Numbered from the stretch's first letter, positions 13,839-56,455 are shown. The stretch is 64,000 nt of DNA from IMGVR_UViG_3300032296_003307:1-64000; one strand, 5' to 3'. Program-made: numbers and translations. Notes: generated from the letters alone by a model not told the origin.

Positions 13839-13858
13839 CATATTTATACACATATATT

Positions 13859-14827
13859 ATGAAAAAATTTGACTTAAAAAAGATGATAGCTGAAAACAAG
13901 GCTACATTCTTTTCTTCCTTGAACGAAGGATACGATGAATTCAAAAGAGCAGAAAAAGGCTCTAAAGATGTAACCGCTAAAGACAAAGGCGAAGAAGAAG
14001 TTTACGGAGCCGGAGTTAAAAAAGGTGAAGAAATCGAAAAGAAAAAAATGAAAGAAAATTTAGATTCAAGTTATGACGATTTATATGATTTTGTAGACCA
14101 AAAAATGGTTGAAGGTGATGAAGAAGCCGAAATGCTATTAAACTCAAACCCAAGTTATGATGATTTATATGATTTTGTAGACCAAAAAATGGTTGAAGGT
14201 GATGATGAAGCAGAAGCATTATTAAATAAAATAAATAATATTAATGAAAATAAATCTTCAAAAATGAAAATGTCTGAATTAAAAGCCAAAATCAAAGAAA
14301 TGGTTTTAGCTGAAATGACTTTAGATGTTGATAATATGGAAGATGCCCCAGAATCAGAAGTTGATTTCTTGACTGAATTAGAAGCAATGTTAGATGAGGC
14401 TGATAAAGACACAGAAAAAGATACAGCCGAAACCGATGCTGATGTAACAATAGACGATACAGAAACTATTGATACTGAAACAACAACCGAAGTAGATCCT
14501 AATGTAAAAGCAGTACAAGATGCTTTAACACAAGCTCAAGCAGCTGCTCAAAAATTAGGTGATAAAAAATTAACAGATCAAATTGGTAACACAATTACCT
14601 TCTTCACTCGTACTCACGTTGTTGAAAAACCAGGTGGAGCAGTAGCAGAAAACTTAAATGAAGGTAGAGCAACTTTACCAAAGTTTAAACAATATTTCAA
14701 AATCATGATTGAAAACCAACCAAATGATGTTTTAGATTTAATTATGGATCTTCTTGAACATGATGGTAAAAATTTTGATGAATGGACAAGTAATATTGCT
14801 GATGATATAATAGATACTTTAGGTTAA
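13859..14827 (+). CDS. Acidic modular protein (putative prohead core/internal protein)
   Basis: Preceded by ATATTTATA; linkers SLNE/MKE/NINE/NLNE; internal 28-aa duplication. Confidence 0.7.
   Translation: MKKFDLKKMIAENKATFFSSLNEGYDEFKRAEKGSKDVTAKDKGEEEVYGAGVKKGEEIEKKKMKENLDSSYDDLYDFVDQKMVEGDEEAEMLLNSNPSYDDLYDFVDQKMVEGDDEAEALLNKINNINENKSSKMKMSELKAKIKEMVLAEMTLDVDNMEDAPESEVDFLTELEAMLDEADKDTEKDTAETDADVTIDDTETIDTETTTEVDPNVKAVQDALTQAQAAAQKLGDKKLTDQIGNTITFFTRTHVVEKPGGAVAENLNEGRATLPKFKQYFKIMIENQPNDVLDLIMDLLEHDGKNFDEWTSNIADDIIDTLG
14067..14226. repeat. 84-bp tandem duplication (SYDDLYDFVDQKMVEGDxEAExLLN x2)
   Basis: Near-identical copies start at 14067 and 14151. Confidence 0.95.
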
Positions 14828-14904
14828 AATAAAAAGATAATAATAAACCTTTAGTTAATGAATCAGTATTCCCAATGTTAAAGAAAATTTTAAAATAAAA
14901 GTAT

Positions 14905-15075
14905 ATGAACACACAAGAAATCTTTGAAAAAATTGAAGCTCTTTATGAGACATTCAAAGCAGAACATGCTGGAAAATCTAAAGCAGCTCACGGTCGTGCT
15001 AGAAAAGTCCTAGGTGAAATCAAGAAATTGGTAGCCGAATACCGTAAAGCCTCTATTGACGAGGACAAAAAGTAA
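14905..15075 (+). CDS. Histone H1-like Hc1-family small protein (Bacteroidota type), missing from the ORF track
   Basis: MNTQEIFEKIEALYETFKAEHAGKSKAAHGRARKVLGEIKKLVAEYRKASIDEDKK (56 aa). KAAxxRARK...xRKxS signature. Confidence 0.75.
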   Translation: MNTQEIFEKIEALYETFKAEHAGKSKAAHGRARKVLGEIKKLVAEYRKASIDEDKK

Positions 15076-15080
15076 TTAAA

Positions 15081-16587: not shown

Positions 16588-16589
16588 TT

Positions 16590-17702
16590 ATGGACGCCTT
16601 AGATATATTTTTCAAAAAGTTCTCTTATAAATTCCCTAAAGGATACCCTGACATGAATAATGAACAGGATAGAGTATTATTGGTAAATTTATTAGAGCAA
16701 ATAGGATTCCCTACTTACAATACTATTATAGTGAAAGAATCAGCCCAAGACATTAAAAATGTTCTTATTGATGCCGGTTACAGTCCTGAAGATATCGTAA
16801 TCAAGAGCAGTAAACAAATACGTTTATTAACAAAAGGTAATGAACGTAAATCCACTATGGATAAACTTGTTCAAGATTTAGGTTATATTTATGACCCTAA
16901 TTTTAAAGGTTCTTCTTTAGGAGCTATTATAGCAGATGACGGAACAGCCATTATTGTTAAGCCAAAAGAAAAACAAGGTACTGGTTCTGCTGGTTTAGAT
17001 AATGAGCAAATGTTGGTTGATTCTATTAATCAATATACCGAAGAAGGTCCTATTAAAGTAGTATTTAAAGGAAGTAATAAAACTATTTCTTTTGATAATG
17101 TAACCAAAGCAAAATCAGTAGGAACAGCAACAGCAGGAAATAAAAAATCAGATGTAGCTCTATATTCTGGTGATAAAATAATTGGTAATCTTTCTCTTAA
17201 AAAGGCAAATGCCTCTATGTGGGAAAGTGCTGATAAAAGATACAAAGAATTAGTTAACAAACTTTCCGAAAAATTAATAAACAATCCCTTTCCTACTATT
17301 GGATTAAGAGAAACAGATAAAAAAGATATTTATCGTTTATATAATCCTAAAACAGGAACAGATTTAAGTGGAATTATTATTACAGATCTTCCGGACAATG
17401 AAAATGAATCAATTGTTTTTGGAACCGATGATCCTAAAGTTCAAGTAATTAAACATACATTCCAACCAAATGATTTTTCTTTCAATAATGGAGTTCTAAC
17501 AATTAATTCAGGCACTACATTTACTGATTTATCTGATATTGAAGGTACAGAATATGAACCTATTTTAGTTTTAAGACATGATGTTACTCGTACAGCAAGT
17601 AAAGGTTTAAGACCAATTGTTTACAATAAAAGCCATGGATACAGAGATGGTGAAATAAAAGGATCTCAAGCCGAGTTAACTTATGATCAAGCTATCTCTT
17701 AA
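16590..17702 (+). CDS. Putative restriction-endonuclease-fold (PD-(D/E)XK) nuclease
   Basis: E(QML)...KKSDVAL...NLSLKK pattern typical of the REase-fold catalytic core. Confidence 0.5.
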   Translation: MDALDIFFKKFSYKFPKGYPDMNNEQDRVLLVNLLEQIGFPTYNTIIVKESAQDIKNVLIDAGYSPEDIVIKSSKQIRLLTKGNERKSTMDKLVQDLGYIYDPNFKGSSLGAIIADDGTAIIVKPKEKQGTGSAGLDNEQMLVDSINQYTEEGPIKVVFKGSNKTISFDNVTKAKSVGTATAGNKKSDVALYSGDKIIGNLSLKKANASMWESADKRYKELVNKLSEKLINNPFPTIGLRETDKKDIYRLYNPKTGTDLSGIIITDLPDNENESIVFGTDDPKVQVIKHTFQPNDFSFNNGVLTINSGTTFTDLSDIEGTEYEPILVLRHDVTRTASKGLRPIVYNKSHGYRDGEIKGSQAELTYDQAIS

Positions 17703-17713
17703 TATTTATAACT

Positions 17714-19378: not shown

Positions 19379-19648
19379 ATGATTAAATTATTAGAAGTAT
19401 TAAACGAATCTCCTCAAAGCAGCTATCCTCCCTACATGTATTCTCCTATTGGGTTTGGATGTCATGTATGTAAATATCATTACATAGAAGAAGGAAAACA
19501 TATGTGTTCCAACAAATACTATCAAGAATACATTTCAGAACAGTTTCCTGATTTAGAGGATCCTGCTGAATTAGTAGATAATGAAGGTAATCCGATTAAA
19601 GATCCTTCAAAATGGTGTTCAAATTGGTTTATGCCTAAAGGTAAATGA
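19379..19648 (+). CDS. Small Cys-rich (Zn-binding) protein with leader peptide
   Basis: CHVC...C...WC; leader MIKLLEVLNE. Confidence 0.7.
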   Translation: MIKLLEVLNESPQSSYPPYMYSPIGFGCHVCKYHYIEEGKHMCSNKYYQEYISEQFPDLEDPAELVDNEGNPIKDPSKWCSNWFMPKGK

Positions 19649-19905
19649 GACCTTACATAGACTTAGAGGTTACAGATTCTTATATTATTCGTGAATTTAG
19701 CGAAAATATAGACCCTATAGAATTACTATGGCATCGTGATGATGAAAACAGAACAGTTGAAATAATTGGTGAAACAGATTGGAAATTACAATTAGATAAT
19801 CAATTACCAACCTCTATAAATCAACCCATATTTATACCAAAACACGAATGGCATCGTGTTATTAAAGGAACAGGAACACTAAAATTAAAAATATACAAAT
19901 CATGA
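19645..19905 (+). CDS. Small cupin-like protein
   Basis: LLWHRD...W..QLDNQLP...IFIPKHEWHRVIK cupin-type pattern. Confidence 0.6.
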   Translation: MRPYIDLEVTDSYIIREFSENIDPIELLWHRDDENRTVEIIGETDWKLQLDNQLPTSINQPIFIPKHEWHRVIKGTGTLKLKIYKS

Positions 19906-20507: not shown

Positions 20508-20562
20508 CTTATAGACCGATTCATAGCTTCTTATATATTTTATATATTTATAATAAAATACA

Positions 20563-20661
20563 ATGATAGGAATCTATAAAATTACAAATCCTGAAGGTAA
20601 AATTTATATTGGTTTATCTAAAAATATTGAAAAACGTTTTAAAAATCATAAAAATTTATAA
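20563..20661 (+). pseudogene. Truncated GIY-YIG homing endonuclease (32-aa remnant)
   Basis: MIGIYKITNPEGKIYIGLSKNIEKRFKNHKNL*: perfect GIY-YIG-R N-terminus then a stop. Preceded by ATATTTATA. Confidence 0.85.
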
Positions 20662-20668: not shown

Positions 20669-20809
20669 AAAATAACTATTTTAGAAGGAGATGGATGGTA
20701 TTTTCAAAGAGACAATGAATTACCTTTTGAACTTAAAGAAGGAGTTGACATATTTATACCAAGATTAGAATGGCACCGTGTTATTAAAATAAAAAGAAAA
20801 CTAAAATAA
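20669..20809 (+). pseudogene. 3' fragment of a cupin-like gene paralogous to 19645..19905
   Basis: GWYFQRDNELP...IFIPRLEWHRVIK aligns to the 19645 protein; no proper N-terminus. Confidence 0.75.
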
Positions 20810-21153: not shown

Positions 21154-21204
21154 AAAAACAGGTGGTGGTCTGATGGGGTTTTCATATATTTATAATAGAA
21201 TAAT

Positions 21205-23502: not shown

Positions 23503-24033
23503 ATGAAAATAGGATTATGTGGAACAATGAGTGTAGGTAAAACTACATTAGTAAATGCTTTAAAGCAATTACCTGAATTTGCAGATTATAATTTTGCAAC
23601 TGAACGTTCAAAGTATTTACGTGATTTAGGTATTCCATTGAATACTGATTCGACATTAAAAGGTCAAGTTATATTTTTGGCAGAAAGAGCTGCTGAATTA
23701 ATGAATGAAAATATCATTACTGATAGAACAGTTATTGATGTTATGGCTTTTACTAAAGTAGCTCAATCAATTAATTACTATGAGGCAGAAACTTTTTGTG
23801 ATTTAGCTAAAAATCTACTTCATGAATATGATTATATATTTTATGTATCTCCTGATGGTGTTGAAATGGAAGATAATGGAGTAAGAGAAATTGACTTGAA
23901 ATACAGAGAGCTTATTGATAATATTATTCAATTAAATTTAGAAAAATATAAACTTCGTATTAAAAACCTTGCTGAAATATCAGGAACAACTGAAGAACGG
24001 ATTGAAAAAATTAAAGAGACAATTTTTGGTTGA
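23503..24033 (+). CDS. NadR/AAA_28-type P-loop nucleoside(tide) kinase
   Basis: KIGLCGTMSVGKTTL, TERS, TDRTVID, YDYIFY, EDNGVRE. Confidence 0.8.
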   Translation: MKIGLCGTMSVGKTTLVNALKQLPEFADYNFATERSKYLRDLGIPLNTDSTLKGQVIFLAERAAELMNENIITDRTVIDVMAFTKVAQSINYYEAETFCDLAKNLLHEYDYIFYVSPDGVEMEDNGVREIDLKYRELIDNIIQLNLEKYKLRIKNLAEISGTTEERIEKIKETIFG

Positions 24034-24044
24034 TATTTATAATC

Positions 24045-25076: not shown

Positions 25077-25077
25077 T

Positions 25078-26646
25078 ATGAGTCAAGATCTAAGACAAAT
25101 AATCAGAGAAGAATATCTAAAGTGCGCTCAAGATCCAGCCCACTTTATGAAAAAATATTGCCACATACAACACCCTCAACGTGGCAGAGTAATATTCAAT
25201 TTATACCCCTTTCAGGAAAAAACATTACGTTTATTTAGAGATAATCCATATTCAATTGTATTAAAATCTCGTCAGTTAGGTATTTCAACATTAGCCGCAG
25301 GTTATTCTTTATGGTTAATGTTATTCCATAAAGACAAAAACGTACTTTGTATTGCAACTAAACAAGAAACAGCTCGTAACATGGTTACGAAGGTTAAGTT
25401 TATGTTTGATAATTTACCTTCTTGGTTAAAAATAAATGCTGAGGAAAACAATAAATTATCATTACGATTAAGTAATGGTTCACAAATTAAAGCCACCTCA
25501 GCAAGTTCAGATGCTGGTCGTTCAGAAGCAGTATCTTTGTTGATAGTCGATGAGGCAGCATTTATTGAACAAATTGGTGAAATTTGGGCTTCTGCTCAAC
25601 AAACATTAGCAACTGGTGGTGGTGCAATTGTATTATCAACTCCTTATGGTACCGGTAACTGGTTCCACAAAACTTGGGTTTCAGCAGAAAATGCTGAAAA
25701 TGATTTTTTACCAATTAAATTACCTTGGTATGTTCACCCTGAACGAGATGAAAATTGGAGAAAACGTCAAGATGAATTATTAGGAGATCCTAGATTAGCA
25801 GCACAAGAATGTGATTGCGATTTTAGTACTTCAGGTGATGTTGTATTTTATCCTGAATGGGTAGATTTTATAAAACAAACAACTATTAAAGATCCATTAG
25901 AGCGAAGAGGTGCTGACCAAAATTTATGGGTTTGGGAACCAGCAGATTACACTAGAGAATATATGATAGTAGCTGACGTAGCTAGAGGTGATGGTAAAGA
26001 CTCCTCAGCATGTCATGTTATTGATATAGCAACTAATACACAAGTTGCCGAATATAGAGGACAATTACCTCCTAAAGAATTTGGTTTCTTTTTAGTTGGG
26101 TTAGCCTCCGAATACAACAATGCAATGTTAGTAGTTGAAAATGCCTCTGTTGGTTGGGCTACTTTAGATGCTATTATTGAAAGAGGTTATCGTAACTTAT
26201 ATCATTCACCAAAATCAGACCAATTAACTGCCGAATCATACCTAAGAGTATTTGAAGGCAGTTCAGATATGACTCCTGGTTTTACAATGTCTTTAAGAAC
26301 AAGACCATTAGTAGTAAATAAATTTAGAGAATATGTTGGTGATCGTTCTGTAACAATTCGTTCAAAACGATTGTTAGAGGAAATGAAAGTATTTGTTTGG
26401 AAAAATGGTAGACCAGAAGCTCAAACAGGATACAACGATGATTTGGTAATGAGTTTTGGTATAGGAATGTATTTGAGAGATACTTCTTTAAAATTCCAAC
26501 AACTTTCTCATGATATGACTCGCGCTACACTTGGAAGTATGAAAAAAGTCACGTATACTGGTGCATACGGTACCAACCAAAATAAAAATCCTTTTCAAGT
26601 AGAAAATCCATATGGTGGATTTGAGGACATTAGTTGGATATTGTAA
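25078..26646 (+). CDS. terL: Terminase large subunit (T4 gp17-like)
   Basis: KSRQLGIS Walker A region, LLIVDEAAF Walker B, LSTPYG, nuclease ADVARGDGKD and YNDDLVMS. Confidence 0.95.
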   Translation: MSQDLRQIIREEYLKCAQDPAHFMKKYCHIQHPQRGRVIFNLYPFQEKTLRLFRDNPYSIVLKSRQLGISTLAAGYSLWLMLFHKDKNVLCIATKQETARNMVTKVKFMFDNLPSWLKINAEENNKLSLRLSNGSQIKATSASSDAGRSEAVSLLIVDEAAFIEQIGEIWASAQQTLATGGGAIVLSTPYGTGNWFHKTWVSAENAENDFLPIKLPWYVHPERDENWRKRQDELLGDPRLAAQECDCDFSTSGDVVFYPEWVDFIKQTTIKDPLERRGADQNLWVWEPADYTREYMIVADVARGDGKDSSACHVIDIATNTQVAEYRGQLPPKEFGFFLVGLASEYNNAMLVVENASVGWATLDAIIERGYRNLYHSPKSDQLTAESYLRVFEGSSDMTPGFTMSLRTRPLVVNKFREYVGDRSVTIRSKRLLEEMKVFVWKNGRPEAQTGYNDDLVMSFGIGMYLRDTSLKFQQLSHDMTRATLGSMKKVTYTGAYGTNQNKNPFQVENPYGGFEDISWIL

Positions 26647-26654
26647 TATTTATA
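26646..26654 (+). promoter_or_regulatory. ATATTTATA putative late promoter (portal)
   Basis: One of 17 copies seen just upstream of start codons. Confidence 0.65.
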
Positions 26655-28587: not shown

Positions 28588-28621
28588 GGATCTTTATATA
28601 TTTATAACAAAATCTTTAGGG

Positions 28622-30413: not shown

Positions 30414-30641
30414 ATGGCAAATATACCAGTAAACCCACTAGGAGTAGTAACAACAACATCAATAACAGGTAGTTTCGCAGGCTTTACAGTAGTGTCAGGT
30501 TCTGCCACTATTACAGGCTTAAAAGATGCTAACGGAGGAGAATTAACAACTACTGACTGGGTTATTCCAGCAGGATTCACTATTCCTATTTACGTAACAA
30601 GTGCTTCTCTTTCATCAGGAGCAATATTACTTTATCCTTAA
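30414..30641 (+). CDS. Small beta-rich structural protein
   Basis: 75-aa Thr/Ser/Gly-rich ORF in the head operon. Confidence 0.6.
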   Translation: MANIPVNPLGVVTTTSITGSFAGFTVVSGSATITGLKDANGGELTTTDWVIPAGFTIPIYVTSASLSSGAILLYP

Positions 30642-30653
30642 TATTTATAACAA

Positions 30654-31872: not shown

Positions 31873-31900
31873 CCCCCTCCTTGGATAGTATCCCTGGACC

Positions 31901-31931
31901 GACCCTCCCCTAAAAAGGAGGGTTTCATTTT
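31901..31931 (+). terminator. Intrinsic terminator
   Basis: GACCCTCC-cctaaaaa-GGAGGGTT followed by TCATTTT. Confidence 0.65.
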
Positions 31932-32080
31932 GCGACCTTTAGAAATTCCCATATATGTATATTTGAATATGCGATCTCTATATCGCATTTATTGAAAATA
32001 TTCTATTACGCTTCGACCTTCGTCAGTCATCAATAAGCGTACTTCCAACAAAAATTATTTGAGGACAAAAACCAAACAAA

Positions 32081-35039: not shown

Positions 35040-35088
35040 AGGTATTCCTACTATATTTATAGGAAACACAGTTATAAAAATAAATTTT

Positions 35089-37449: not shown

Positions 37450-37488
37450 GACGAAGCCATAGCTTTTTAATATTTATACCCAAAAAGC

Positions 37489-42033: not shown

Positions 42034-43584
42034 ATGCCATTCAATTCAGGGTCAATAACTGATTTTACTAATACAGCCATAAGTAATACCTACCAAAGGG
42101 TAGTTCAAACTGATGGTACATTATTGGCCGATGGTACAGGCAGTATTTTAGATAATTTAAATCTTCCTAATTTAAGCATCAGTGGTAACTTGTATGTAAG
42201 TGGTACTTTATATGCAGAAAACACAGTAACAGTTACCCAATCTTATTATTCAGGTTCTCAAATATTTGGTGACCAATTAACAGATACTCATAGATTTACA
42301 GGTTCTATTTTATCAACAGGATCAAATGTTTTTAATGGAGTAAACACCTTTACAGGGTCAGTAAATATAACAGGATCCCTAAACATAAATGGAGTTGATT
42401 ATAATCAAACTAGTGCCTCTTTTGATACTAGAATCCTAAATAACAGCTCTAGTATAGCTTTATTAAGTGGAAGCTTCGAATCATTTAGTGGTTCATACCT
42501 AATAGATAGTGCTTCTTTTAGTTCTAGTATTGCTTTCTTAAGTAGTAGTTATTTGTTTTCTAGTGCATCTTTTGACACAAGAATTTTAAACAACAGTTCT
42601 AGCATTGCTTTATTAAGTGGAAGCTTCGAATCATTTAGTGGTTCTTATTTATTAGATAGTGCCTCATTTGACACAAGAATTTTAAACAACAGTTCTAGCA
42701 TTGCTTTCCTAAGTGGTAGTTACCTATTCTCAAGTGCCTCTTTTGATACTAGAATCTTAAATAACAGCTCGAGCATAGCTTATTTATCATCTTCGTTTTT
42801 AACTTTTAGTGGTTCATACAATACAGGATCTTTTACAGGTAGTTTTACAGGTTCTTTATTTGGGACTTCTTCTTATGCACTGAATGCTTTAACAGCTTCA
42901 CATGCTCTAACAGCATCCTCTGCTGACTCATTTGTTGTAAGAAATTCATTTACAGCAAGTGGATTAAGATATCCAATAGCAGATAATGGTGAATTTTCTT
43001 TTATACAAACTGATGGTCTTGGTAATTTAAGTTTACAATATGTAAATACATTGTATGAGGTTATTGTTAATGGTGAAACAACAACCATTACAAAAGGAAC
43101 ACCAGTTTATGTATCAGGATCACAAGGTGCTAATTCAATAGTTTATAGAGCAGATGCAGGAAACCCTGCTAAAATGCCTGTAATCTATATTTCAGCCGAT
43201 AATATAGCAGCAGGAGATACAGGCAGAGGTGTTGTTTTAGGTTTAATCACCGGAGTTAATACAACAGGATATCCAGCAGGAACAGAAATATTTGTAGCCG
43301 TAGGAGGAGGTTATACAGCAACAAGACCAACAGGATCAGCAATAGTTCAGGTACTAGGAATTGTAACCAAAGAAGGAAATGGAGGACAAGGAGTAGTATT
43401 AAACCCCGGTCCTGCAAACTTACCAAATTTACCTTCAGGATCGGTTTGGGTTGGAAATAGTGGAAGTTTTCCTACAGCAGTATTAACTTCTTCTTTAAGT
43501 GTCGCTAGTGCTTCTTTTGCAATAAGTGCATCTTATGCTTTAACTGCATCTTATGTTCCAATAATAGATGGAGGAACTTTTTAA
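42034..43584 (+). CDS. Tail fibre/virion fibre protein with internal repeats
   Basis: TGS/SGS-rich, coiled-coil repeats, C-terminal GTPVY...GVVLG...GTEIFV capsid-fibre-like domain. Confidence 0.7.
   Translation: MPFNSGSITDFTNTAISNTYQRVVQTDGTLLADGTGSILDNLNLPNLSISGNLYVSGTLYAENTVTVTQSYYSGSQIFGDQLTDTHRFTGSILSTGSNVFNGVNTFTGSVNITGSLNINGVDYNQTSASFDTRILNNSSSIALLSGSFESFSGSYLIDSASFSSSIAFLSSSYLFSSASFDTRILNNSSSIALLSGSFESFSGSYLLDSASFDTRILNNSSSIAFLSGSYLFSSASFDTRILNNSSSIAYLSSSFLTFSGSYNTGSFTGSFTGSLFGTSSYALNALTASHALTASSADSFVVRNSFTASGLRYPIADNGEFSFIQTDGLGNLSLQYVNTLYEVIVNGETTTITKGTPVYVSGSQGANSIVYRADAGNPAKMPVIYISADNIAAGDTGRGVVLGLITGVNTTGYPAGTEIFVAVGGGYTATRPTGSAIVQVLGIVTKEGNGGQGVVLNPGPANLPNLPSGSVWVGNSGSFPTAVLTSSLSVASASFAISASYALTASYVPIIDGGTF
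42412..42780. repeat. Four SASFDTRILNNSSSIA coding repeats
   Basis: Near-identical DNA copies AGTGCxTCxTTTGAxACxAGAATxxTAAAxAACAG. Confidence 0.9.
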
Positions 43585-43592
43585 TATTTATA
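43584..43592 (+). promoter_or_regulatory. ATATTTATA putative late promoter (tail fibre)
   Basis: Same motif, 4 nt before the ATG. Confidence 0.65.
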
Positions 43593-47903: not shown

Positions 47904-47921
47904 AATATTTATAATAAACCA

Positions 47922-48951: not shown

Positions 48952-48989
48952 TAATATTTATAACAAACCTGGAAAGTGAAAGGTAACTT

Positions 48990-49388: not shown

Positions 49389-49415
49389 TTGATTTAATAA
49401 TATTTATAACAAAAC

Positions 49416-50117: not shown

Positions 50118-50119
50118 AC

Positions 50120-50371
50120 ATGGAAAAACAAGTTTTAACACAAGAAGAGTTACAAGAACTAACAAACTTACGTACAAAAAGAGATCAAATTATGGCCGAT
50201 TTTGGATACATTGAACTCCAAATTCAAGAGCTAGAATTGGTAAAAGAAACCTTAGTTGAAAATCTTTCGGCTTTAAAAGCAGAAGAAGCACAATTAGGTA
50301 CAATGATACAAAACAAATATGGAAAAATCTCAGTAAATATGGAAACAGGAGAAATTACTTCTGTAGACTAA
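50120..50371 (+). CDS. Small coiled-coil protein (possible chaperone)
   Basis: Heptad-rich; ends KYGKISVNMETGEIT. Confidence 0.65.
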   Translation: MEKQVLTQEELQELTNLRTKRDQIMADFGYIELQIQELELVKETLVENLSALKAEEAQLGTMIQNKYGKISVNMETGEITSVD

Positions 50372-50429
50372 TTTTTGAGGTTCCCTGCCATATTTATCAT
50401 AGAATAAAACAAATTATAATTTAAAGAAC

Positions 50430-52178
50430 ATGGCAGAAACATTAATATCACCTGGCGTACTAGCATTAGAAAACGACCAGTCATTTGTATCCCAACAACC
50501 TGTTACCGTTGGTGCCGCTATCATTGGTCCTACAGTTAAAGGCCCTGTAGAAGTTCCTACAATTGTTACCTCTTACAGTGATTATCAGAATAAATTTGGT
50601 ACTACTTTCTTAAGTAGCAGCCAAGTTTATACTTATTTCACTTCTATCGCCGCTTACAATTATTTTGCAAACGGTGGTCAAACATTATTGGTAGCAAGAG
50701 TAGTAAGTGGTTCATTCACTTCAGCTACTACAGCAACCGCTTCTGTAACTGGTCCTTCTGGTGGTGGAGTATCTATTCTTAACTTTAATACTTCTCAATC
50801 TTTAGTATTAAACACTATTTCTCAAGGAACTGTTATGAATAGTTCAAGCTCCTTAGATTCAGCAGGTGCTTTGGCTTCAGGTTCATCTGATAACATTAGA
50901 TGGCAAATTGCTAACGCTGATACATCATCAGGTACTTTCTCATTACTAATTAGACAAGGTGATGATACTACTCTTACTCCTACAGTATTAGAAACATGGA
51001 CTAACTTATCAATGGATCCTACAGCTCCTAACTATGTAGCAAGAGTAATTGGTGACCAATATAGACAATACAATGTAGCCGATAACCAAATTGAAGTTTT
51101 AGGTACTTATCCTAATGCTTCAAGATATGTTTATGTATCTAGTGTTCCAACAGCAACTCCTTTCTATTTTGATAACAACGGTATAGCTAAATCTAGCTTT
51201 ACTGGTTCTATTCCTAGAAATGCAAGTGGTTCTTTTACAGGTGCTACTGGTAATTTATTTGGAAACAATGCTAAATTCTATAGTAATATAGTTTCTGGTG
51301 TAACAAATATTCAAGGTGTTTTAAGTTCAAGCTATGATAACATGATTGCTTTATTAGCAAACCAAGATGATTATGTATTCAATGTATTAATGACTCCTGG
51401 TTTGTTTGCTTCTGAAGCCCCACTTGGTTCTTCTCAAGTAACTTCAATCATTTCAAACACTGAAAACAGAGGTGATAATATCTATGTAAGTGATTTAGTA
51501 CCTTTTAGCTCAAGCATTACATCAGTAACTAGTCAAGCAAATTCTAAAAACACTTCATACGCTGCTACTTACTGGCCTTGGGTTCAAGTAATTGATCCTG
51601 ATTCTGCTCAATTAGTATGGGTACCTGCCTCAACAATGATTGGTGGTGTGTATGCATTTAACGATTCAGTTTCAGAACCTTGGTTTGCTCCTGCTGGTAT
51701 TAACAGAGGTGGATTAAGCACAGTAGTAAGAGCTGAAAAGAAATTATCTCAAGCTAACCGCGATACTTTATACCAAAATAAAGTTAACCCAATTGCAACA
51801 TTCCCTGGAAACGGAGTTGTAGTATATGGTCAGAAAACATTACAAACTAAAGCATCTGCACTTGATCGTGTGAATGTAAGAAGATTGTTAATTGCTCTTA
51901 AATCTTATATCTCTCAAGTTGCTCAAAACTTGGTGTTTGAACAAAACACAATAGCTACTCGTACTAGCTTCTTAAACCAAGTTAATCCATATTTGGAATC
52001 AGTTCAACAGAGACAAGGTTTATATGCCTTCAGAGTAGTAATGGATGATTCAAATAATACTCCTGATGTAATTGATAGAAATCAGTTAGTTGGTGCTATT
52101 TACTTACAACCAACCAAAACAGCTGAATTCATTTACTTAAACTTCAATATTTTACCAACTGGAGTTTCTTTTGAATAA
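50430..52178 (+). CDS. gp18: Tail sheath protein (T4 gp18-like)
   Basis: SPGV, GPTVKGP, YWPWV, PWFAPAGINRG, LYQNKVNPI, DRVNVRRLL, FEQN. Confidence 0.97.
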   Translation: MAETLISPGVLALENDQSFVSQQPVTVGAAIIGPTVKGPVEVPTIVTSYSDYQNKFGTTFLSSSQVYTYFTSIAAYNYFANGGQTLLVARVVSGSFTSATTATASVTGPSGGGVSILNFNTSQSLVLNTISQGTVMNSSSSLDSAGALASGSSDNIRWQIANADTSSGTFSLLIRQGDDTTLTPTVLETWTNLSMDPTAPNYVARVIGDQYRQYNVADNQIEVLGTYPNASRYVYVSSVPTATPFYFDNNGIAKSSFTGSIPRNASGSFTGATGNLFGNNAKFYSNIVSGVTNIQGVLSSSYDNMIALLANQDDYVFNVLMTPGLFASEAPLGSSQVTSIISNTENRGDNIYVSDLVPFSSSITSVTSQANSKNTSYAATYWPWVQVIDPDSAQLVWVPASTMIGGVYAFNDSVSEPWFAPAGINRGGLSTVVRAEKKLSQANRDTLYQNKVNPIATFPGNGVVVYGQKTLQTKASALDRVNVRRLLIALKSYISQVAQNLVFEQNTIATRTSFLNQVNPYLESVQQRQGLYAFRVVMDDSNNTPDVIDRNQLVGAIYLQPTKTAEFIYLNFNILPTGVSFE

Positions 52179-52193
52179 TTTTTTAAAGATAGA

Positions 52194-52202
52194 ATATTTA
52201 TA
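52194..52202 (+). promoter_or_regulatory. ATATTTATA putative late promoter (tail tube)
   Basis: Same motif, 23 nt before the ATG. Confidence 0.65.
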
Positions 52203-52225
52203 ACAAAATAAAATAGATAAATAAA

Positions 52226-52714
52226 ATGGCAGTATTAAATCCAAACGAAATATTTTTCACAGCCTTTGAACCAAAACAGGCAAACCGTTTCATCATGTAT
52301 ATAGACGGTATACCAGCGTATGAAATCAAAGGTGTTGGTGCAGTCACATTAACCCAAGGTACTGTTCCTTTAAACCATATAAACGTACAACGCTTTGTTA
52401 AAGGTAAAACAACATGGGGTACTATCCAATTCACATTGTTTGACCCTATCACTCCTTCAGGTGCTCAAGCAGTAATGGAATGGGTACGTTTACATCACGA
52501 ATCAGTAACTGGTAGAGATGGTTACTCAGACTTCTACAAGAAAGATTTAACTTTTGATGTATTAGGTCCTGTGGGTGATATCGTATCAGAATGGATTATC
52601 AAAGGTGCTTTAATTACAGAAGCCAACTTTGGTGATTACAACTGGGATACTGTTGATACTGCTGTAAACATTACTATGACCGTTCAACCAGATTACTGTG
52701 TATTGAACTTCTAA
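52226..52714 (+). CDS. gp19: Tail tube protein (gp19-like)
   Basis: Follows sheath; NRFIMYI, TWGTIQFTLFD, EWIIKGA, FGDYNW. Confidence 0.9.
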   Translation: MAVLNPNEIFFTAFEPKQANRFIMYIDGIPAYEIKGVGAVTLTQGTVPLNHINVQRFVKGKTTWGTIQFTLFDPITPSGAQAVMEWVRLHHESVTGRDGYSDFYKKDLTFDVLGPVGDIVSEWIIKGALITEANFGDYNWDTVDTAVNITMTVQPDYCVLNF

Positions 52715-52736
52715 TCTAAAAAAGAAAATCATAAAA

Positions 52737-52767
52737 GAGCTCGCATTTTTTGCGAGCTTCTTTTTTT
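52737..52767 (+). terminator. Intrinsic terminator after the tail tube gene
   Basis: AGCTCGCA-ttttt-TGCGAGCT followed by TCTTTTTTT. Confidence 0.85.
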
Positions 52768-52794
52768 CTATAATATTTATAACAAAATAAGTTT

Positions 52795-53535
52795 ATGAGC
52801 GAATTTAAGTTTCCAACAGAAGTTGTGGAGTTGCCTTCAAAAGGTTTATTATATCCTGAAGGCTCACCTTTAGCAGAAGGTAAAATTGAAATGAAATACA
52901 TGACTGCTAAAGAAGAAGACATTTTAACTAACCAAAATTACATTAGACAAGGTATTGTAATTGACAAATTGCTTCAATCCATGATTGTAAGTGAAATCGA
53001 TTATAATGATCTTTTAGTGGCAGATAAAGATGCTATTATGGTTGCAGCCCGTATTTTAGGTTATGGTAAAGATTATTCTTTTAATTACGGAGGTAAAGAA
53101 GTAACAGTTGATTTAACCTTAATGAAAGAAAAATTATTAGATGAATCTTTAATCAAAAACAAACGAACCAATGAATTCCATTTCACATTACCCCACTCAG
53201 GAAATGAAATTTCTTTCAAATTATTTACTCATGGTGATGAAAAGAAAATAGAAAAAGAATTAGAAGGTTTAAAAAAGATTGACCCTAAAGGAAGTTTTGA
53301 ATTATCTACAAGATTAAAACACATGGTTTTATCCGTTAATGGAAACAGAGATACCAAATCAATCAGGGAATTTGTAGATAATGTATTTCTAGCCAGAGAT
53401 TCAAAAGCATTTAGAGATTATGTATCCAAAATATCTCCAGGAATTGATTTAAAATTTGATTTTGAAGATGATGGTTACGTTGAGGAGGGCGTAAATCTTC
53501 CTATTACTGTTAACTTTTTTTGGCCTGACGCCTGA
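52795..53535 (+). CDS. Tail assembly chaperone / baseplate hub assembly protein
   Basis: ELPSKG..Y, KYMTAKEEDIL, L...DKDAIMVAARILGYG; lies between tube and tape measure. Confidence 0.8.
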   Translation: MSEFKFPTEVVELPSKGLLYPEGSPLAEGKIEMKYMTAKEEDILTNQNYIRQGIVIDKLLQSMIVSEIDYNDLLVADKDAIMVAARILGYGKDYSFNYGGKEVTVDLTLMKEKLLDESLIKNKRTNEFHFTLPHSGNEISFKLFTHGDEKKIEKELEGLKKIDPKGSFELSTRLKHMVLSVNGNRDTKSIREFVDNVFLARDSKAFRDYVSKISPGIDLKFDFEDDGYVEEGVNLPITVNFFWPDA

Positions 53536-53797
53536 TTATAGATGGACTCTTTTTACTCAAATACATGAAATATGTTTTTGGGGTCAAGGAGGTTATGATT
53601 ATGAAACTGTTTATAACATGCCTATTTGGTTAAGAAAGTATACTTTTAATAAAATTTTAGATTTTCATAAACAAAAGAATAATTCTCAACAAAATGATGT
53701 AGTTGAACAATCTATAAAAAATATGAAATCAGCAGGATCGGTTAATAATAAAAAAATACAAGTTCCTGATTATGTAACGAAGGCATCTAAAAAATGA
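53522..53797 (+). CDS. Frameshift extension of the tail chaperone (G-T/E-E' type), missing from the ORF track
   Basis: Open +1 frame GLTPDYRWTLFTQIHEICFWGQGGYDYETVYNMPIWLRKYTF...KASKK* with no 5' ATG, entered at the T7 run 53515-21. Confidence 0.75.
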   Translation, partial: GLTPDYRWTLFTQIHEICFWGQGGYDYETVYNMPIWLRKYTFNKILDFHKQKNNSQQNDVVEQSIKNMKSAGSVNNKKIQVPDYVTKASKK

Positions 53798-53829
53798 TGC
53801 CTTCAAATATTTATCATAAATAGTTTCTA

Positions 53830-56427
53830 ATGGCTAAAAAAATAGATAATGAACAAGATTTAAGAAAATTAACTAAAGAAACTTCTGTAGTTGTTGAAGA
53901 TGCACTTAGAAGTATAGCTAGTAATGTTGGTAGTATTTTTAAACAAGCCTTAGAAGAAACTCAAGATGTTTCAAAATCTTTAGTTAGAGATACTACTTCC
54001 TCTTTAAATAGTTTAGCTAAAGTTTCCAATGTTTTAGCAACAAACATGGAAAAAGCAGCTAATGGTACTTTAAAACAAAGTGATGTCCTAAAAACAATCC
54101 AGGACAGACAAGCTAAAATAAAAGCTCTTGAAGCTCAAATAGCTATTGCTAGTAATAATAATACAAAAGCTAAAGAAAAATTAGAAAAACAACTTCAACA
54201 AATTAAAGAATATGAAGAAGAAGTAAATATTCAATTAAAACAACAATTAGAACTTTCTAAAAAAGTTAATAAAAATATGGGGGTTACTGGAGATATTCTT
54301 AAAGGAATATCTAAGATCCCAATTTTAGGAAATTTTATAGATGCTGAAGAAGCTTTGATGGCTGCTCAAGTAGAAGCTTCTAAACAAGGTGCTACTAGAG
54401 CTAAAGCTATGAATGCTGCTTTTTCTCAAATGGGTAAAACCATGAAAGAAAAATTAACAGATCCTTTAGTTTTATTTGGAGTTGGTTTATCTATTTTTAA
54501 ATCTTTAATTAATTTAGGATTAAGATATGATCAAGTTACAACTGATATAGCCCGAAACCAAGGAATAAGTACCTCAGAGGCTGAAAAAACTCATCTTTAT
54601 TTAAAAGAAGCAGCAACTACTTCACGAGATTTATTAGCTACTACTCACAATTTTGCTATGGCTCAAGCATCCTTAAATGATGCTTTTGGAACATCAGCAG
54701 ATTTTTCTGCAAAAACATTAGAAGATTTTACTAATTTAACCAAAAAACTTGGTTTAACTAATGAAGAAGCAGCTGTTTTTGCAGGCTTTAGTGCAACTAC
54801 TGGTAAAACTTCTGAACAAATTGTTAACAGTATAGGTAAACAAAACAAAGGAGTTATAAATAATAAAAAAGTAATTTCTGAAGTTGCCAAAATTAATGGA
54901 CAATTATATGCCCAATATAAAGGTAGTCCTATAGAATTAGCTAAAGCAGTAATTCAAACACAAAAATTAGGAATGAGCTTACAACAAGCTTCATCCGCTT
55001 CAAAAAATCTTTTAAATTTTGAAGAATCAATTTCAGCAGAATTAGAAGCAGAATTATTAACAGGTAGAGATTTAAATCTAGAAAAAGCCAGATATTTGGC
55101 TTTACAAGGAGATTCAGCGGGAGCTGCTGCTGAATTAATGAAAAATGTAGGTAGTTTAAAAGATTTTACTAGATTAAATGTTATTCAACAAGAAGCATTA
55201 GCAAGAGCAGTAGGAATGACTGCAGATGAGTTAACTGATTCTTTAAGAAAACAAGAACAAATAAAAGAACTTGATAAAGGCCAAGTAAAACTTTATCAAA
55301 AACAAATTCAAGATTTAAGAGATAAAGGAAAGATAGAGGAAGCAAATGCTTTGGAAAAACAAATGATCCAAGGAAAAGACTTTGAACTATCCAAACTCCA
55401 GTTATCTGCCCAAGAAAAATTATCAGCTGCTGCTGATAAACTTAAAGACACTTTTGCAGCTATTGTATCTGGTCCTATTGGAGGTTTTGTTTCTAAATTT
55501 GTTGATATAATAGCTAAAATAGCTTCTACAGGTATAGGTAAATTAGCATTAGGAGGAGTAGCAATAGTTGCTTTAGGAACAGCTATTTTAGCAATGACCA
55601 AAGTATTTGGTAAAATGGCTATATTAGGAGCAATGCCTGTTATTCCTGTTGGTGGTGGAGGAATAGGTGGAGGTGGTGGAGTAACAGACATGTTAGGAAA
55701 AGGATTAGGTGGAGGAAGATCAGCAGGTTTAGGTAAACAATTAATGACCGCTGCTACAAAACCTAAAGTTTTAGGAAAAGCTCTTAGTCGTGCTGGTGGT
55801 GGAAGTATGCTTAGAGGACTAGGTAGAAGTGCTTTAGGTGGAGTAGCCGGTAAAGTAATAGCTCCTGCTACTTCTGTTGCTATGACCTTGGGAGGTCTTT
55901 ATGATTTCTTTTCAGAAGATAAACTAAGAGATACAGGTGTAGGAGGATTTTTTGAAAGTTTAGGAGGTACAGGAATGCATCTTCTTGATACCTTAACTTT
56001 CGGAGGTACTAAACTAATCACTAATGCCACAGGAATATCCATTCCAGGAATGGATACAGATGATGTAGCGAGTGCTAGAGCAATTTTCCATGATTCAGGT
56101 AGAGACCCAGATGATAGTAGATTCCCTATTTCTACCGATAACAAACAATTAATTGAAGATATTCTAAAAAACCCATCTGCCTATCCTGAAGGTATTGTTC
56201 AACAAGCCCAAGGAGTTAATATAACTGAATTGGCTGTAGGAGGTATGGTTACTAGACCTACAAGAGCTTTAATAGGTGAAGCAGGTCCTGAAGCTGTTGT
56301 TCCTCTTGATAAATTTTATGCCAAATTAGATGAATTAATAATGGCTGTTAAATCAGGAGGAAATGTATATTTAGATGGAACTAGAGTAGGTACAGCAATG
56401 AATGTTAGTACGTATAAAGTTCAATAA
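53830..56427 (+). CDS. Tape measure protein
   Basis: Long helical Ala/Leu/Lys-rich ORF; LNLEKARYLAL; C-terminal LAVGGMVTRPTRALIGEAGPEAVVPL. Confidence 0.9.
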   Translation: MAKKIDNEQDLRKLTKETSVVVEDALRSIASNVGSIFKQALEETQDVSKSLVRDTTSSLNSLAKVSNVLATNMEKAANGTLKQSDVLKTIQDRQAKIKALEAQIAIASNNNTKAKEKLEKQLQQIKEYEEEVNIQLKQQLELSKKVNKNMGVTGDILKGISKIPILGNFIDAEEALMAAQVEASKQGATRAKAMNAAFSQMGKTMKEKLTDPLVLFGVGLSIFKSLINLGLRYDQVTTDIARNQGISTSEAEKTHLYLKEAATTSRDLLATTHNFAMAQASLNDAFGTSADFSAKTLEDFTNLTKKLGLTNEEAAVFAGFSATTGKTSEQIVNSIGKQNKGVINNKKVISEVAKINGQLYAQYKGSPIELAKAVIQTQKLGMSLQQASSASKNLLNFEESISAELEAELLTGRDLNLEKARYLALQGDSAGAAAELMKNVGSLKDFTRLNVIQQEALARAVGMTADELTDSLRKQEQIKELDKGQVKLYQKQIQDLRDKGKIEEANALEKQMIQGKDFELSKLQLSAQEKLSAAADKLKDTFAAIVSGPIGGFVSKFVDIIAKIASTGIGKLALGGVAIVALGTAILAMTKVFGKMAILGAMPVIPVGGGGIGGGGGVTDMLGKGLGGGRSAGLGKQLMTAATKPKVLGKALSRAGGGSMLRGLGRSALGGVAGKVIAPATSVAMTLGGLYDFFSEDKLRDTGVGGFFESLGGTGMHLLDTLTFGGTKLITNATGISIPGMDTDDVASARAIFHDSGRDPDDSRFPISTDNKQLIEDILKNPSAYPEGIVQQAQGVNITELAVGGMVTRPTRALIGEAGPEAVVPLDKFYAKLDELIMAVKSGGNVYLDGTRVGTAMNVSTYKVQ

Positions 56428-56455
56428 TTTTTAATATTTATAACAAAATAAAACT

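What the first reader, a model, noticed from the sequence alone, without database searches (positions are those of the whole stretch)
13840..56442. ATATTTATA motif precedes late genes and is the reverse complement of the T4 late promoter
Seen: exact copies at 13840, 17702, 20544, 21186, 24033, 26646, 28598, 30641, 35053, 37470, 43584, 47905, 48954, 49400, 52194, 52773 and 56434, each 3-30 nt before an ATG. Variants occur at 4608, 21063, 31953, 50390, 53807 and 63933, and coding-embedded copies at 12728, 19828 and 20750 lie about 60 nt before the next gene. Only a handful would be expected by chance in 64 kb, and few of those intergenic. Known: the T4 gp55 promoter is TATAAATA, while here the sense strand carries TATTTATA. 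Inference: a distinct phage sigma specificity, or a translational enhancer in a host without Shine-Dalgarno signals.
Basis: partly seen in the sequence, partly recalled or inferred. Interest (0 to 1): 0.65.

Follow-up and report, generated by a model that had tools for sequence, protein, structure and literature searches.

The report
Phage promoter box TATTTATA, sigma-linked
The repeated ATATTTATA is real and is most likely the core (-10-like) promoter box of a large freshwater phage of Bacteroidota, probably read by a sigma factor the phage encodes, often so close to the ATG that the mRNA would have no leader; no transcript data exist yet.

Summary
Observation confirmed. ATATTTATA occurs 22 times in the window against 4.3 expected, and 21 copies are on the gene strand. 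Twenty copies or one-base variants lie 3-31 nt before an ATG of head, tail and other genes.

The window is the first 64 kb of a 268.7-kb myophage with T4-like head genes and no Shine-Dalgarno signals. Genome-wide the invariant core is TATTTAT(A/T), found before about 110 of about 389 ORFs.

I read it as a -10/-7-type promoter box, not a translation signal, for four reasons:
- It has the same geometry as the host-type Bacteroidota box TAnnTTTG in the same genome: 8-mer, 4 nt, then ATG.
- Outward-facing copies fill 18-52-nt gaps between divergent genes.
- The core stays invariant in 80 related metagenomic loci and in Flavobacterium phage immuto.
- In the Shine-Dalgarno-using relative Mel-JY01 it sits 16-41 nt upstream, ahead of the Shine-Dalgarno sequence.

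All three phages encode a divergent sigma-70-family protein whose region 2 resembles T4 gp55. That protein is the likely reader; the link is inferred.

Being the reverse complement of T4's TATAAATA is a by-product of near-palindromy. The motif differs from T4's at two central bases. No transcription-start data were available. Verdict: new variant of a known kind.

The parts
4608..4616 (+). variant box ATATTTATG, 13 nt before ATG 4630 (ATPase/kinase-like ORF)
13840..13848 (+). box ATATTTATA, 10 nt before ATG 13859
17702..17710 (+). box, 3 nt before ATG 17714; its first A is the last base of the upstream TAA stop
20544..20552 (+). box, 10 nt before ATG 20563 (32-codon GIY-YIG remnant)
21186..21194 (+). 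box, 10 nt before ATG 21205
24033..24041 (+). box with TG two bases upstream, 3 nt before ATG 24045
26646..26654 (+). box, 19 nt before ATG 26674 (portal protein); directly follows the terminase large-subunit gene
28598..28606 (+). box, 15 nt before ATG 28622
30641..30649 (+). box, 4 nt (ACAA) before ATG 30654: leaderless geometry
35053..35061 (+). box, 27 nt before ATG 35089; follows a hairpin plus T-run after the major capsid gene
37470..37478 (+). box, 10 nt before ATG 37489
43584..43592 (+). box, 4 nt (AACA) before ATG 43597 (924-aa ORF): leaderless geometry
47905..47913 (+). box, 8 nt before ATG 47922
48954..48962 (+). box, 27 nt before ATG 48990
49400..49408 (+). box, 7 nt before ATG 49416. 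In related lake strains this point is joined directly to the sheath start (49417 to 50430).
50390..50398 (+). variant box ATATTTATC, 31 nt before ATG 50430 (tail sheath)
52194..52202 (+). box, 23 nt before ATG 52226 (tail tube)
52773..52781 (+). box, 13 nt before ATG 52795 (baseplate hub); follows a perfect 8-bp hairpin plus T-run
53807..53815 (+). variant box ATATTTATC, 14 nt before ATG 53830 (865-aa ORF, at the position of the tape measure in phage immuto)
56434..56442 (+). box, 13 nt before ATG 56456
31958..31965 (+). host-type Bacteroidota -7 box TATATTTG in the 208-nt gap before the scaffold-like and major-capsid gene pair.
19828..19836 (+). coding copy (encodes I-F-I within ...PIFIPKHEWHRVIK); paralogue of 20750; probably incidental
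20750..20758 (+). coding copy (encodes I-F-I within ...DIFIPRLEWHRVIK); probably incidental
12728..12736 (+). coding copy (W-I-F-I near the end of ORF 12179-12796); function open
57666..57674 (-). the only minus-strand copy, inside ORF 56779-58683; chance-level

Best explanation
TATTTAT(A/T), usually preceded by A or G and in the structural module extended to TAATATTTATAACAA, is the -10/-7-type core element of a phage-specific promoter class. It uses host core RNA polymerase with a phage-encoded sigma-70-family protein.

The best candidate for that sigma is the 247-aa protein at G000:C1:245426-246169 (minus strand, outside the window), whose region 2 resembles T4 gp55. By position the box corresponds to T-12 A-11 T-10 T-9 T-8 A-7 T-6 W-5, the place of the host box TAnnTTTG. 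Transcription would then start 4-5 nt downstream.

In the window this gives leaders of about 0-26 nt, A-rich and without a Shine-Dalgarno sequence. At about 50 other genes the ATG sits exactly at the predicted start, so the mRNAs would be leaderless.

Shown: the motif, its strand, position and spacing statistics, its conservation, and the existence and fold of the sigma-like protein.

Inferred: that the motif is a promoter, where transcription starts, and which factor reads it.
For: (1) Enrichment and placement.
- 22 copies against 4.3 expected, 21 on the sense strand.
- ATATTTAT is the top 8-mer upstream of ORFs genome-wide: 76 ORFs, 16-fold.
- 92 of 128 degenerate sites lie in the 7.2% of the genome that is intergenic.

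(2) Geometry matches the host promoter box.
- Independent of gene calls, an ATG follows the 8-mer after exactly 4 nt at 31-35 of 178 sites by two counts; controls give 1-4.
- 53 of 59 ATGs at 3-5 nt open ORFs of 45 or more codons, against 28% for random ATGs.
- Host-type TAnnTTTG boxes in the same genome show the same 8-mer + 4 nt + ATG arrangement at 10 of 53 intergenic sites. Some have TTG about 19 nt upstream, and some precede tRNA genes.
- In Flavobacterium johnsoniae that box spans -12 to -5 with 4-5 nt to the start site (PMC6847099).

(3) Divergent genes. Six divergent gene pairs separated by only 18-52 nt carry an outward-facing box on each strand, 1-11 nt (mostly 3-5) from each ATG. 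Transcription must start inside those gaps.

(4) Terminators. Several boxes directly follow a hairpin plus T-run: 8 of 110 with perfect stems, against 23 of 2000 random positions (examples).

(5) Conservation.
- The core is invariant while flanks diverge at the orthologous site next to the sigma gene in 80 IMG/VR loci. ATATTTAT is again the top upstream 8-mer there, 20-fold.
- Flavobacterium phage immuto carries it before portal, sheath, tube and other structural genes.
- Immuto's array of small early genes instead uses TTG-N19/20-TATATTTAG.

(6) Not a translation signal. In Mel-JY01, where 26 of 39 genes have Shine-Dalgarno-like sequences, the same box lies 16-41 nt upstream of the ATG, with an SD-like sequence between at 8 of its 10 sites.

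(7) The sigma candidate.
- Profile of 62 homologues against PDB: the top five hits are SigA (three times), an ECF sigma and T4 gp55.
- hhalign against gp55: E 1.4e-4 over 113 columns.
- AlphaFold model pLDDT 91.
- Structure alignment: gp55 Z 10.9, other sigma region-2 domains Z 8.7-9.6 at rmsd 2.3-3.0.
- Homologues exist in immuto (E 9e-36) and Mel-JY01 (E 1e-29), the two other genomes shown to carry the box.
- No RNA polymerase beta homologue in the genome.

(8) Not a known host motif. Known Flavobacterium sigma motifs (sigma-A, sigma-54, TAnnTTGY, ECF-CGT) do not include TATTTAT (PMC9723704).
Against: - No transcript 5' ends could be examined. The only RNA run is assembled contigs from a wastewater metatranscriptome.
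- The sigma-motif pairing rests on co-occurrence in three genomes plus 80 close loci. No covariation was seen, because the motif is the same in all of them.
- The block that contains the sigma gene itself begins with a TATTTAT box (264371, minus strand). An early route to the sigma is therefore not identified in this genome.
- A second, ECF-type sigma is encoded at 158640-159206 and could be involved.
- No upstream (-35-like) element is conserved, although the candidate has a C-terminal domain that superposes on the sigma 3/4 region.
- The major-capsid operon lacks the box.
- Single-sequence matches of the candidate to sigma families are weak (E 0.002-0.09).
Confidence: 0.6

Rival explanations
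1. The box is simply a phage-flavoured version of the host sigma-A -7 element and is read by the unmodified host holoenzyme. No phage sigma is needed.
For: - Same position relative to the ATG as the host-type TAnnTTTG boxes.
- It shares T-12, A-11, T-8 and T-6 with the host consensus.
- The gene block holding the sigma candidate starts with the box.
Against: - T-7 and G-5 are nearly invariant in Flavobacterium promoters. The phage box has an invariant A at -7 and G at -5 in only 3% of sites.
- Canonical TAnnTTTG boxes coexist in the same genome as a separate class, including before tRNA genes.
- In immuto the two classes partition by module: early array against structural genes.
- The same box is kept in Mel-JY01, whose genes use Shine-Dalgarno sequences and whose reported host is a cyanobacterium.
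Confidence: 0.14
2. The box is a promoter, but it is read by another phage factor: the ECF-type sigma at 158640-159206, or an unrecognised activator or appropriator of host sigma.
For: A bona fide ECF sigma is encoded (Pfam region 2 E 5.7e-11, region 4_2 E 4.2e-11; PDB ECF sigmas E 4e-11). The two spacing and consensus classes (structural module against small-gene cassettes) could reflect two readers.
Against: - No homologue of the ECF sigma was found in immuto or Mel-JY01, which both have the box. This was a single-sequence search, so sensitivity is limited.
- From general knowledge, ECF sigmas normally need a -35 element and a CGT-type -10. No upstream conservation is seen.
- The ECF gene is itself downstream of a box.
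Confidence: 0.14
3. The motif acts on RNA as an AU-rich endonuclease processing site that cuts polycistronic transcripts just before each gene.
For: It is AU-only, lies at gene junctions (often overlapping the upstream stop codon) and is strand-specific.
Against: - Divergent gene pairs with 18-52-nt gaps have no upstream transcript to process.
- Boxes sit directly after hairpin-plus-T-run terminators.
- The geometry is identical to the host DNA promoter box.
Confidence: 0.05
4. The motif is a translational enhancer or ribosome-binding substitute for a host without Shine-Dalgarno pairing.
For: Only 24 of 389 ORFs have a Shine-Dalgarno-like core. Many boxes are at a fixed short distance from the ATG.
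Against: - The distance varies from 3 to 31 nt in the window and from 11 to 30 nt at most structural-gene sites in immuto.
- In Mel-JY01 it lies upstream of a normal Shine-Dalgarno sequence, 16-41 nt from the ATG.
- At the 4-nt sites the element would lie outside the mRNA if the promoter reading is right.
- The translation signals described for F. johnsoniae are mRNA secondary structure and individual upstream nucleotides ('Kozak-like'), not a UAUUUAU block (abstract of PMC6847099).
Confidence: 0.03

Closest known systems
T4 late promoters (TATAAATA at -13 to -6) read by gp55 with gp33 and the gp45 sliding clamp
   Same: - An 8-bp A/T-only box without a -35 partner, placed just before virion genes of a phage with T4-like head genes.
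- The phage encodes a small sigma whose region-2 domain superposes on gp55 (Z 10.9).
- The two adenines that gp55 buries in deep pockets (-12 and -8 in T4 numbering) are kept.
   Different: - The sequence differs at the two central positions (AA to TT).
- The candidate sigma is 247 aa with an extra C-terminal domain.
- No gp45-type clamp was found. The relative immuto is annotated with a family A polymerase and DnaB-type helicase, both with homologues in this genome, rather than T4-type replication proteins.
- The host is a Bacteroidota-type organism.
- Many sites are placed for leaderless mRNA.
Bacteroidota sigma-A promoters (-33 TTG / -7 TAnnTTTG)
   Same: Same length and same place relative to the predicted start: 8-mer, 4-5 nt, then +1. 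Shares T-12, A-11, T-8 and T-6.
   Different: A instead of T at -7, and A/T instead of the near-invariant G at -5. Positions -10 and -9 are fixed as TT. No -33 element.
Phage sigma cascades (Bacillus phage SPO1 gp28 and gp33/34) - from general knowledge
   Same: Host-type early promoters followed by phage-sigma-dependent promoter classes. In immuto the sigma gene sits at the end of the early gene array.
   Different: Unrelated sequences. The temporal order here is inferred from genome layout only.
Leaderless mRNA promoters (common in Deinococcus and mycobacteria; 5.5% of mRNAs in F. psychrophilum, few in F. johnsoniae)
   Same: The -10-type box ends 4-5 nt before an AUG. ATG is the only start codon seen at that spacing.
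   Different: The hosts of this phage group mostly use leadered mRNAs, so the phage would depart from host practice. Start sites are not mapped.
Promoter-stem-loop cassettes (PeSLs) that mediate modular shuffling in T4-type phages - from general knowledge
   Same: Small ORFs each bounded by a hairpin and a promoter box. Related lake strains join box-adjacent points and drop the genes between them.
   Different: PeSLs carry host-type early promoters. Here the box is the phage-specific one.

Membership tests
T4-type gp55-dependent late promoter system | 8-bp TATAAATA on the non-template strand at -13 to -6 | tested here: not met
   The sense strand carries TATTTAT(A/T). On the + strand TATAAATA occurs 26 times against 71 for TATTTATA. 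T4 positions are from PMC2988020.
T4-type gp55-dependent late promoter system | No -35 element | tested here: met
   Information content is about 0 upstream of the box in all site classes.
T4-type gp55-dependent late promoter system | Phage-encoded gp55 homologue | tested here: inconclusive
   Similarity is limited to the region-2 domain: gp55 E 0.007, phrog_234 E 0.0016, hhalign probability 53% and E 1.4e-4, structure Z 10.9. The protein is 247 aa with an added C-terminal domain, and cellular sigmas score equally well.
T4-type gp55-dependent late promoter system | gp45 sliding clamp as activator, gp33 as co-activator | tested here: not met
   phrog_223 (gp45) has no match in the 268.7-kb genome. 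gp33 was not searched.
T4-type gp55-dependent late promoter system | Sites precede virion (late) genes | tested here: met
   Portal, tube and baseplate hub, and via variants the sheath and the 865-aa gene. The box also precedes non-structural genes.
Bacteroidota sigma-A promoter (-7 box TAnnTTTG) | T-12 A-11 H H T-8 T-7 T-6 G-5 | tested here: not met
   A is invariant at -7. Position -5 is A 54%, T 33%, G 3%. Consensus from PMC6847099.
Bacteroidota sigma-A promoter (-7 box TAnnTTTG) | 4-5 nt between the box and the transcription start | not testable with these tools
   No start-site data. The peak of ATG at 4 nt fits.
Sigma-70 family (the 247-aa candidate) | Region-2 fold with the conserved aromatic residue used for -10 recognition | tested here: met
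   Profile hits to SigA region 2 at E 0.0016. Region-2 domains superpose at rmsd 2.3-3.0 over 82-97 residues. Y107 is near-invariant in the family and pairs with gp55 Y97 in the hhalign alignment.
Sigma-70 family (the 247-aa candidate) | Region-4 helix-turn-helix | tested here: inconclusive
   Full-length sigma chains align across model residues 25-247. The C-terminal domain was not searched alone, and there is no Pfam region-4 hit.
Shine-Dalgarno-like translation signal | Fixed short distance to the start codon inside the mRNA | tested here: not met
   3-31 nt in the window. 16-41 nt and upstream of the Shine-Dalgarno sequence in Mel-JY01.
Leaderless mRNA gene | Transcript 5' end at the A of the AUG | not testable with these tools
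   Only the geometry is available: 8-mer + 4 nt + ATG at 31-35 sites, and divergent pairs with gaps as short as 18 nt.

The most novel reading that the evidence does not exclude
A very abundant lineage of freshwater and marine myophages shares a previously undescribed sigma family with its own G/C-free promoter box TATTTATW. The family has 1122 representative clusters at 50% identity. The box is kept across phages whose hosts use different translation signals.

The jumbo member studied here would express about 50 genes as leaderless mRNAs, in a host phylum where such mRNAs are rare. It also carries its own ribosomal protein bS21 and a 7-deazaguanine DNA-modification pathway. A promoter without G or C would be indifferent to that modification.
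Probability: 0.45. Interest if true: 0.68.

Novelty: new variant of a known kind. Interest (0 to 1): 0.55.

Why it matters
Transcription signals of phages that infect Bacteroidota are almost unknown, although these phages are abundant in lakes and seas.

A defined box plus a candidate sigma gives several practical gains:
- It predicts transcription units in hundreds of uncultured genomes.
- It separates host-dependent genes from phage-sigma-dependent genes by sequence alone.
- It offers a testable orthogonal promoter and sigma pair for Flavobacteria, where standard genetic tools work poorly.

The predicted leaderless cassettes would be a natural system for studying Shine-Dalgarno-independent and leaderless initiation on Bacteroidota ribosomes. 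A cultured relative, phage immuto on Flavobacterium sp. LMO8, carries both parts, so the prediction can be tested directly.

Tried and rejected
- **Public reads.** Twenty runs hold the stretch, almost all lake-water DNA. The single RNA run is kept as contigs and has an 8% word share. It shows presence only: no starts, no strand.
- **Phage RNA polymerase.** No match to Rpb2 domain 6. The T7-type family search rang nowhere, including in the controls, so it says nothing.
- **Host-consensus promoters as the main signal.** TTG-N17-21-TAnnTTTG occurs 68 times against about 38 expected, equally on both strands. This is a minority class, not the dominant one.
- **phrog_12791, another late-sigma family.** No match.
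- **Foldseek on the sigma model.** Nothing at E <= 0.001, because the two domains are oriented differently, although nearly every row was a sigma factor. The VIA-align second look resolved this.
- **The search for related loci with the 62-sequence alignment.** An 8-sequence alignment worked.
- **Literature.** No paper in the held library reports TATTTATA or ATATTTAT as a phage promoter, or treats transcription of immuto or Mel-JY01.
- **tRNA genes as a translation-free test.** None of the 30 tRNA genes is preceded by the box. Some are preceded by host-type boxes. This is uninformative for the translation hypothesis.
Rejected because they break the invariant core.

Full report
**What the window is.** The window is the first 64 kb of a single 268,739-bp viral contig with 32% G+C. 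All long ORFs of the window are on the + strand. It encodes:
- terminase large subunit (25030-26646);
- a gp20-like portal (26674-28587);
- a gp23-like major capsid protein (to 34976);
- a head-tail adaptor, tail sheath (50430-52178), tail tube (52226-52714) and baseplate hub (52795-53535).

From about 62.6 kb onward come replication and nucleotide-metabolism genes, including homologues of family A polymerase, DnaB, DpdA and QueC/D/E.

The nearest cultured relatives are Flavobacterium phage vB_FspM_immuto and, further away, Microcystis phage Mel-JY01. The DNA is found almost only in lake-water metagenomes.

Three things point to a Bacteroidota-type host:
- Only 24 of 389 crude ORFs have a Shine-Dalgarno-like core.
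- The genome carries typical TAnnTTTG boxes.
- The closest isolate infects Flavobacterium.

**The observation.** ATATTTATA occurs 22 times, against 4.34 +/- 2.11 expected, and 0 of 100 shuffles reached 22. Twenty-one copies are on the + strand. It missed 63047 (+) and 57666 (-).
- Seventeen exact copies end 3-27 nt before an ATG that opens a long ORF.
- Three variants that keep the core (4608, 50390, 53807) also precede ORFs, including the sheath gene.
- Three proposed variants break the core and are not counted: 21063, 31953 and 63933.
- The coding copies at 19828 and 20750 encode I-F-I-P in homologous C-termini of two paralogous proteins. 12728 encodes W-I-F-I. These are most simply coding coincidences.

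**The motif genome-wide.** The most enriched 8-mer within 60 nt upstream of ORFs is ATATTTAT: 76 ORFs, 16-fold.
- The invariant core is TATTTAT. It is preceded by A (71%) or G (17%) and followed by A (54%) or T (33%).
- 110 of 233 core copies lie within 60 nt upstream of a same-strand ORF.
- 92 of 128 [AG]TATTTAT[AT] copies lie in the 7.2% of the genome that is intergenic.
- No position further upstream is conserved.

Two usage classes appear:
- **Structural and replication modules (1-115 kb).** The consensus is long, TAATATTTATAACAA, and the distance to the ATG varies.
- **128-235 kb.** About 50 mostly small ORFs carry [A/G]TATTTAT[A/T] with the ATG after exactly 4 nt (sometimes 3 or 5), often just after a hairpin and T-run.

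The spacing peak does not depend on my ORF calls. ATG follows the 8-mer at 4 nt in 31-35 of 178 copies by two counts, while control 8-mers give 1-4. ATG is the commonest triplet there, with no GTG or TTG among the top triplets. Of 59 such ATGs at 3-5 nt, 53 open ORFs of 45 or more codons, against 28% for random ATGs.

**Why it is a promoter box.**

First, the same genome holds a second class of intergenic boxes that match the Bacteroidota sigma-A -7 element TAnnTTTG. There are 53 intergenic copies, mainly between 114 and 222 kb.
- Ten of them have the ATG after exactly 4 nt, for example TATCTTTG-tatt-ATG.
- Some have TTG about 19 nt upstream.
- Some precede tRNA genes.

In Flavobacterium johnsoniae this element occupies -12 to -5, with 4 or 5 nt to the mapped start (PMC6847099). 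F. psychrophilum gives the same placement (PMC9723704). The phage box therefore sits exactly where a -7 box sits, and the A of the ATG falls at +1.

Second, six divergent gene pairs are separated by only 18-52 nt. Each carries an outward-facing box on each strand, 1-11 nt (mostly 3-5) from each ATG: 131240/131287, 156682/156723, 160276/160329, 162186/162205, 184359/184387 and 264359/264403. Nothing upstream can supply those transcripts.

Third, boxes directly follow terminator-like hairpins. Examples are those after the capsid gene at 35053 and before the baseplate hub at 52773. With perfect stems the count is 8 of 110 sites, against 23 of 2000 random positions.

Fourth, conservation.
- In 80 IMG/VR loci (1.46 Mb) around homologues of the sigma candidate, ATATTTAT is again the top upstream 8-mer: 198 ORFs, 20-fold.
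- At the orthologous junction after the sigma gene the core never changes, while the flanks and the 3-nt spacer vary freely.
- Phage immuto has the box 11-30 nt before portal, sheath, tube and other structural genes.

**Why it is not a translation signal.** Mel-JY01 has Shine-Dalgarno-like sequences before 26 of 39 genes in its structural region. It carries the same ATATTTAT(A/G) box 16-41 nt (mostly 32-36) upstream of the ATG, with an SD-like sequence in between at 8 of its 10 sites. The element therefore follows the phage lineage, not the host's way of starting translation. Its distance to the ATG adjusts to what the leader must contain.

An RNA-processing role is excluded for the divergent pairs and is unlikely after terminators.

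**Who reads it.** No RNA polymerase beta homologue was found, so host core enzyme is presumably used. Two sigma-like genes exist, both outside the window.

*Candidate 1.* A 247-aa protein at G000:C1:245426-246169 (minus strand).
- Alone it gives only weak hits: T4 gp55 E 0.007, phrog_234 'late sigma transcription factor' E 0.0016, Pfam Sigma70_r2 E 0.087.
- Its family is very large: 1122 clusters at 50% identity.
- A profile of 62 members hits SigA three times (E 0.0016-0.006), an ECF sigma and gp55 as the five best PDB matches.
- hhalign against gp55 gives E 1.4e-4 over 113 columns.
- A confident model (pLDDT 91) superposes on gp55 (Z 10.9, 118 of 137 residues) and on isolated region-2 domains (Z 8.7-9.6, rmsd 2.3-3.0). 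Full-length sigmas span residues 25-247.
- The family's near-invariant Y107 pairs with gp55 Y97, the residue that stacks on the flipped adenine.
- Homologues are present in immuto (E 9e-36, annotated hypothetical gp118) and in Mel-JY01 (E 1e-29).

In immuto this gene closes an array of small genes. Twenty-three of that phage's 27 plus-strand copies of the host-like promoter TTG-N18-22-TAT[AC]TTTAG lie in that stretch. The first gene after the sigma gene carries ATATTTATA. That layout is what a cascade from host sigma to phage sigma would look like.

*Candidate 2.* A regular ECF sigma of 188 aa at 158640-159206 (Pfam region 2 and region 4_2 both about 5e-11).
- It lies behind a box itself.
- No homologue was found in immuto or Mel-JY01.
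- From general knowledge, ECF sigmas use -35/-10 pairs unlike this box.

This is inference from co-occurrence.

**Relation to T4.** T4 late promoters are TATAAATA at -13 to -6. gp55 flips A-12, A-9 and A-8 into pockets, the first and last into deep ones. TATTTATA is indeed the reverse complement, but only because both are near-palindromes. Read in the same direction, it differs at the two central bases and keeps the two deep-pocket adenines.

Three features separate this system from T4's:
- No gp45-type clamp was found.
- The relative immuto is annotated with a family A polymerase and DnaB-type helicase, and homologues of both are present in this genome; this is not the T4 replication set.
- The candidate sigma has an extra domain.

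This is a system that works like the gp55 system, not a member of it.

**Weak points.**
- No start sites are mapped.
- The sigma-box link lacks covariation.
- The sigma gene's own block starts with a box, so how the first sigma is made in this genome is open.
- The capsid operon lacks the box. It has a 208-nt upstream region with a hairpin and a host-type TATATTTG.
- My ORF calls are crude.

**Verdict.** The motif is real and far beyond chance. It is a promoter element with high probability (about 0.85). That a phage-encoded sigma of the gp55-like kind reads it is plausible (about 0.6 for the whole statement). The translational-enhancer idea is rejected. It is a new variant of a known kind.

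The prediction of many leaderless mRNAs is the most interesting part, because hosts of this kind mostly use leadered mRNAs: 87% have leaders over 10 nt in F. johnsoniae and 5.5% are leaderless in F. psychrophilum.

Noticed in passing
G000:C1:158640-159206 (+), outside the window (L098:2640-3206): A second phage sigma factor of ordinary ECF type, 188 aa (Pfam Sigma70_r2 5.7e-11, r4_2 4.2e-11). It sits 5 nt behind GTATTTATA. Its target promoters are unknown.
   Followed up: partly
G000:C1:232583-232771 (-), outside the window (L100): Phage-encoded ribosomal protein bS21 (Pfam PF01165 E 2e-10, above cut-off). Mel-JY01 also annotates an S21 gene inside its head module. This may bear on Shine-Dalgarno-less or leaderless translation.
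   Followed up: no
G000:C1:74352-80935, outside the window: Homologues of DpdA, QueC, QueD, QueE and FolE, a 7-deazaguanine DNA-modification pathway also present in phage immuto. The phage-specific promoter box contains no G or C, unlike the host box TAnnTTTG.
   Followed up: partly
window 20563-20661: A 32-codon remnant of a GIY-YIG homing endonuclease N-terminus starts 10 nt after the box at 20544. An ORF in another frame follows, whose C-terminus duplicates that of the gene at 19645-19905. This looks like the scar of a homing-endonuclease insertion.
   Followed up: partly
window 31872-32080: The scaffold-like and major-capsid gene pair has no TATTTAT box. Its 208-nt upstream gap holds a CCCTCC/GGAGGG hairpin with a T-run, a host-type TATATTTG at 31958 and a second small hairpin. 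This suggests a long structured leader or a different control.
   Followed up: partly
window 49417 to 50430, in lake metagenome contigs: Related strains join the point just after the box at 49400 directly to the sheath start with a different short spacer. This drops the two genes at 49416-50371. Gene cassettes appear to be exchanged at the boxes.
   Followed up: no
G000:C1:182219-212380, outside the window: Thirty tRNA genes. Some clusters are preceded by host-type TAnnTTTG boxes 10-22 nt upstream of the mature 5' end.
   Followed up: partly
L011:10900-26300 (phage immuto 60.9-76.3 kb): About 23 small genes each carry a nearly identical promoter, GTTG-N19/20-TATATTTAGGTAT, with a conserved leader (caataattaaaaca). 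This is a striking early-gene cassette array ending at the sigma homologue gp118.
   Followed up: partly
L012 (Microcystis phage Mel-JY01): The phage is reported on Microcystis and its genes carry Shine-Dalgarno-like sequences. Yet it shares the head and tail module, the sigma family, an S21 gene and the promoter box with Flavobacterium-type phages.
   Followed up: no
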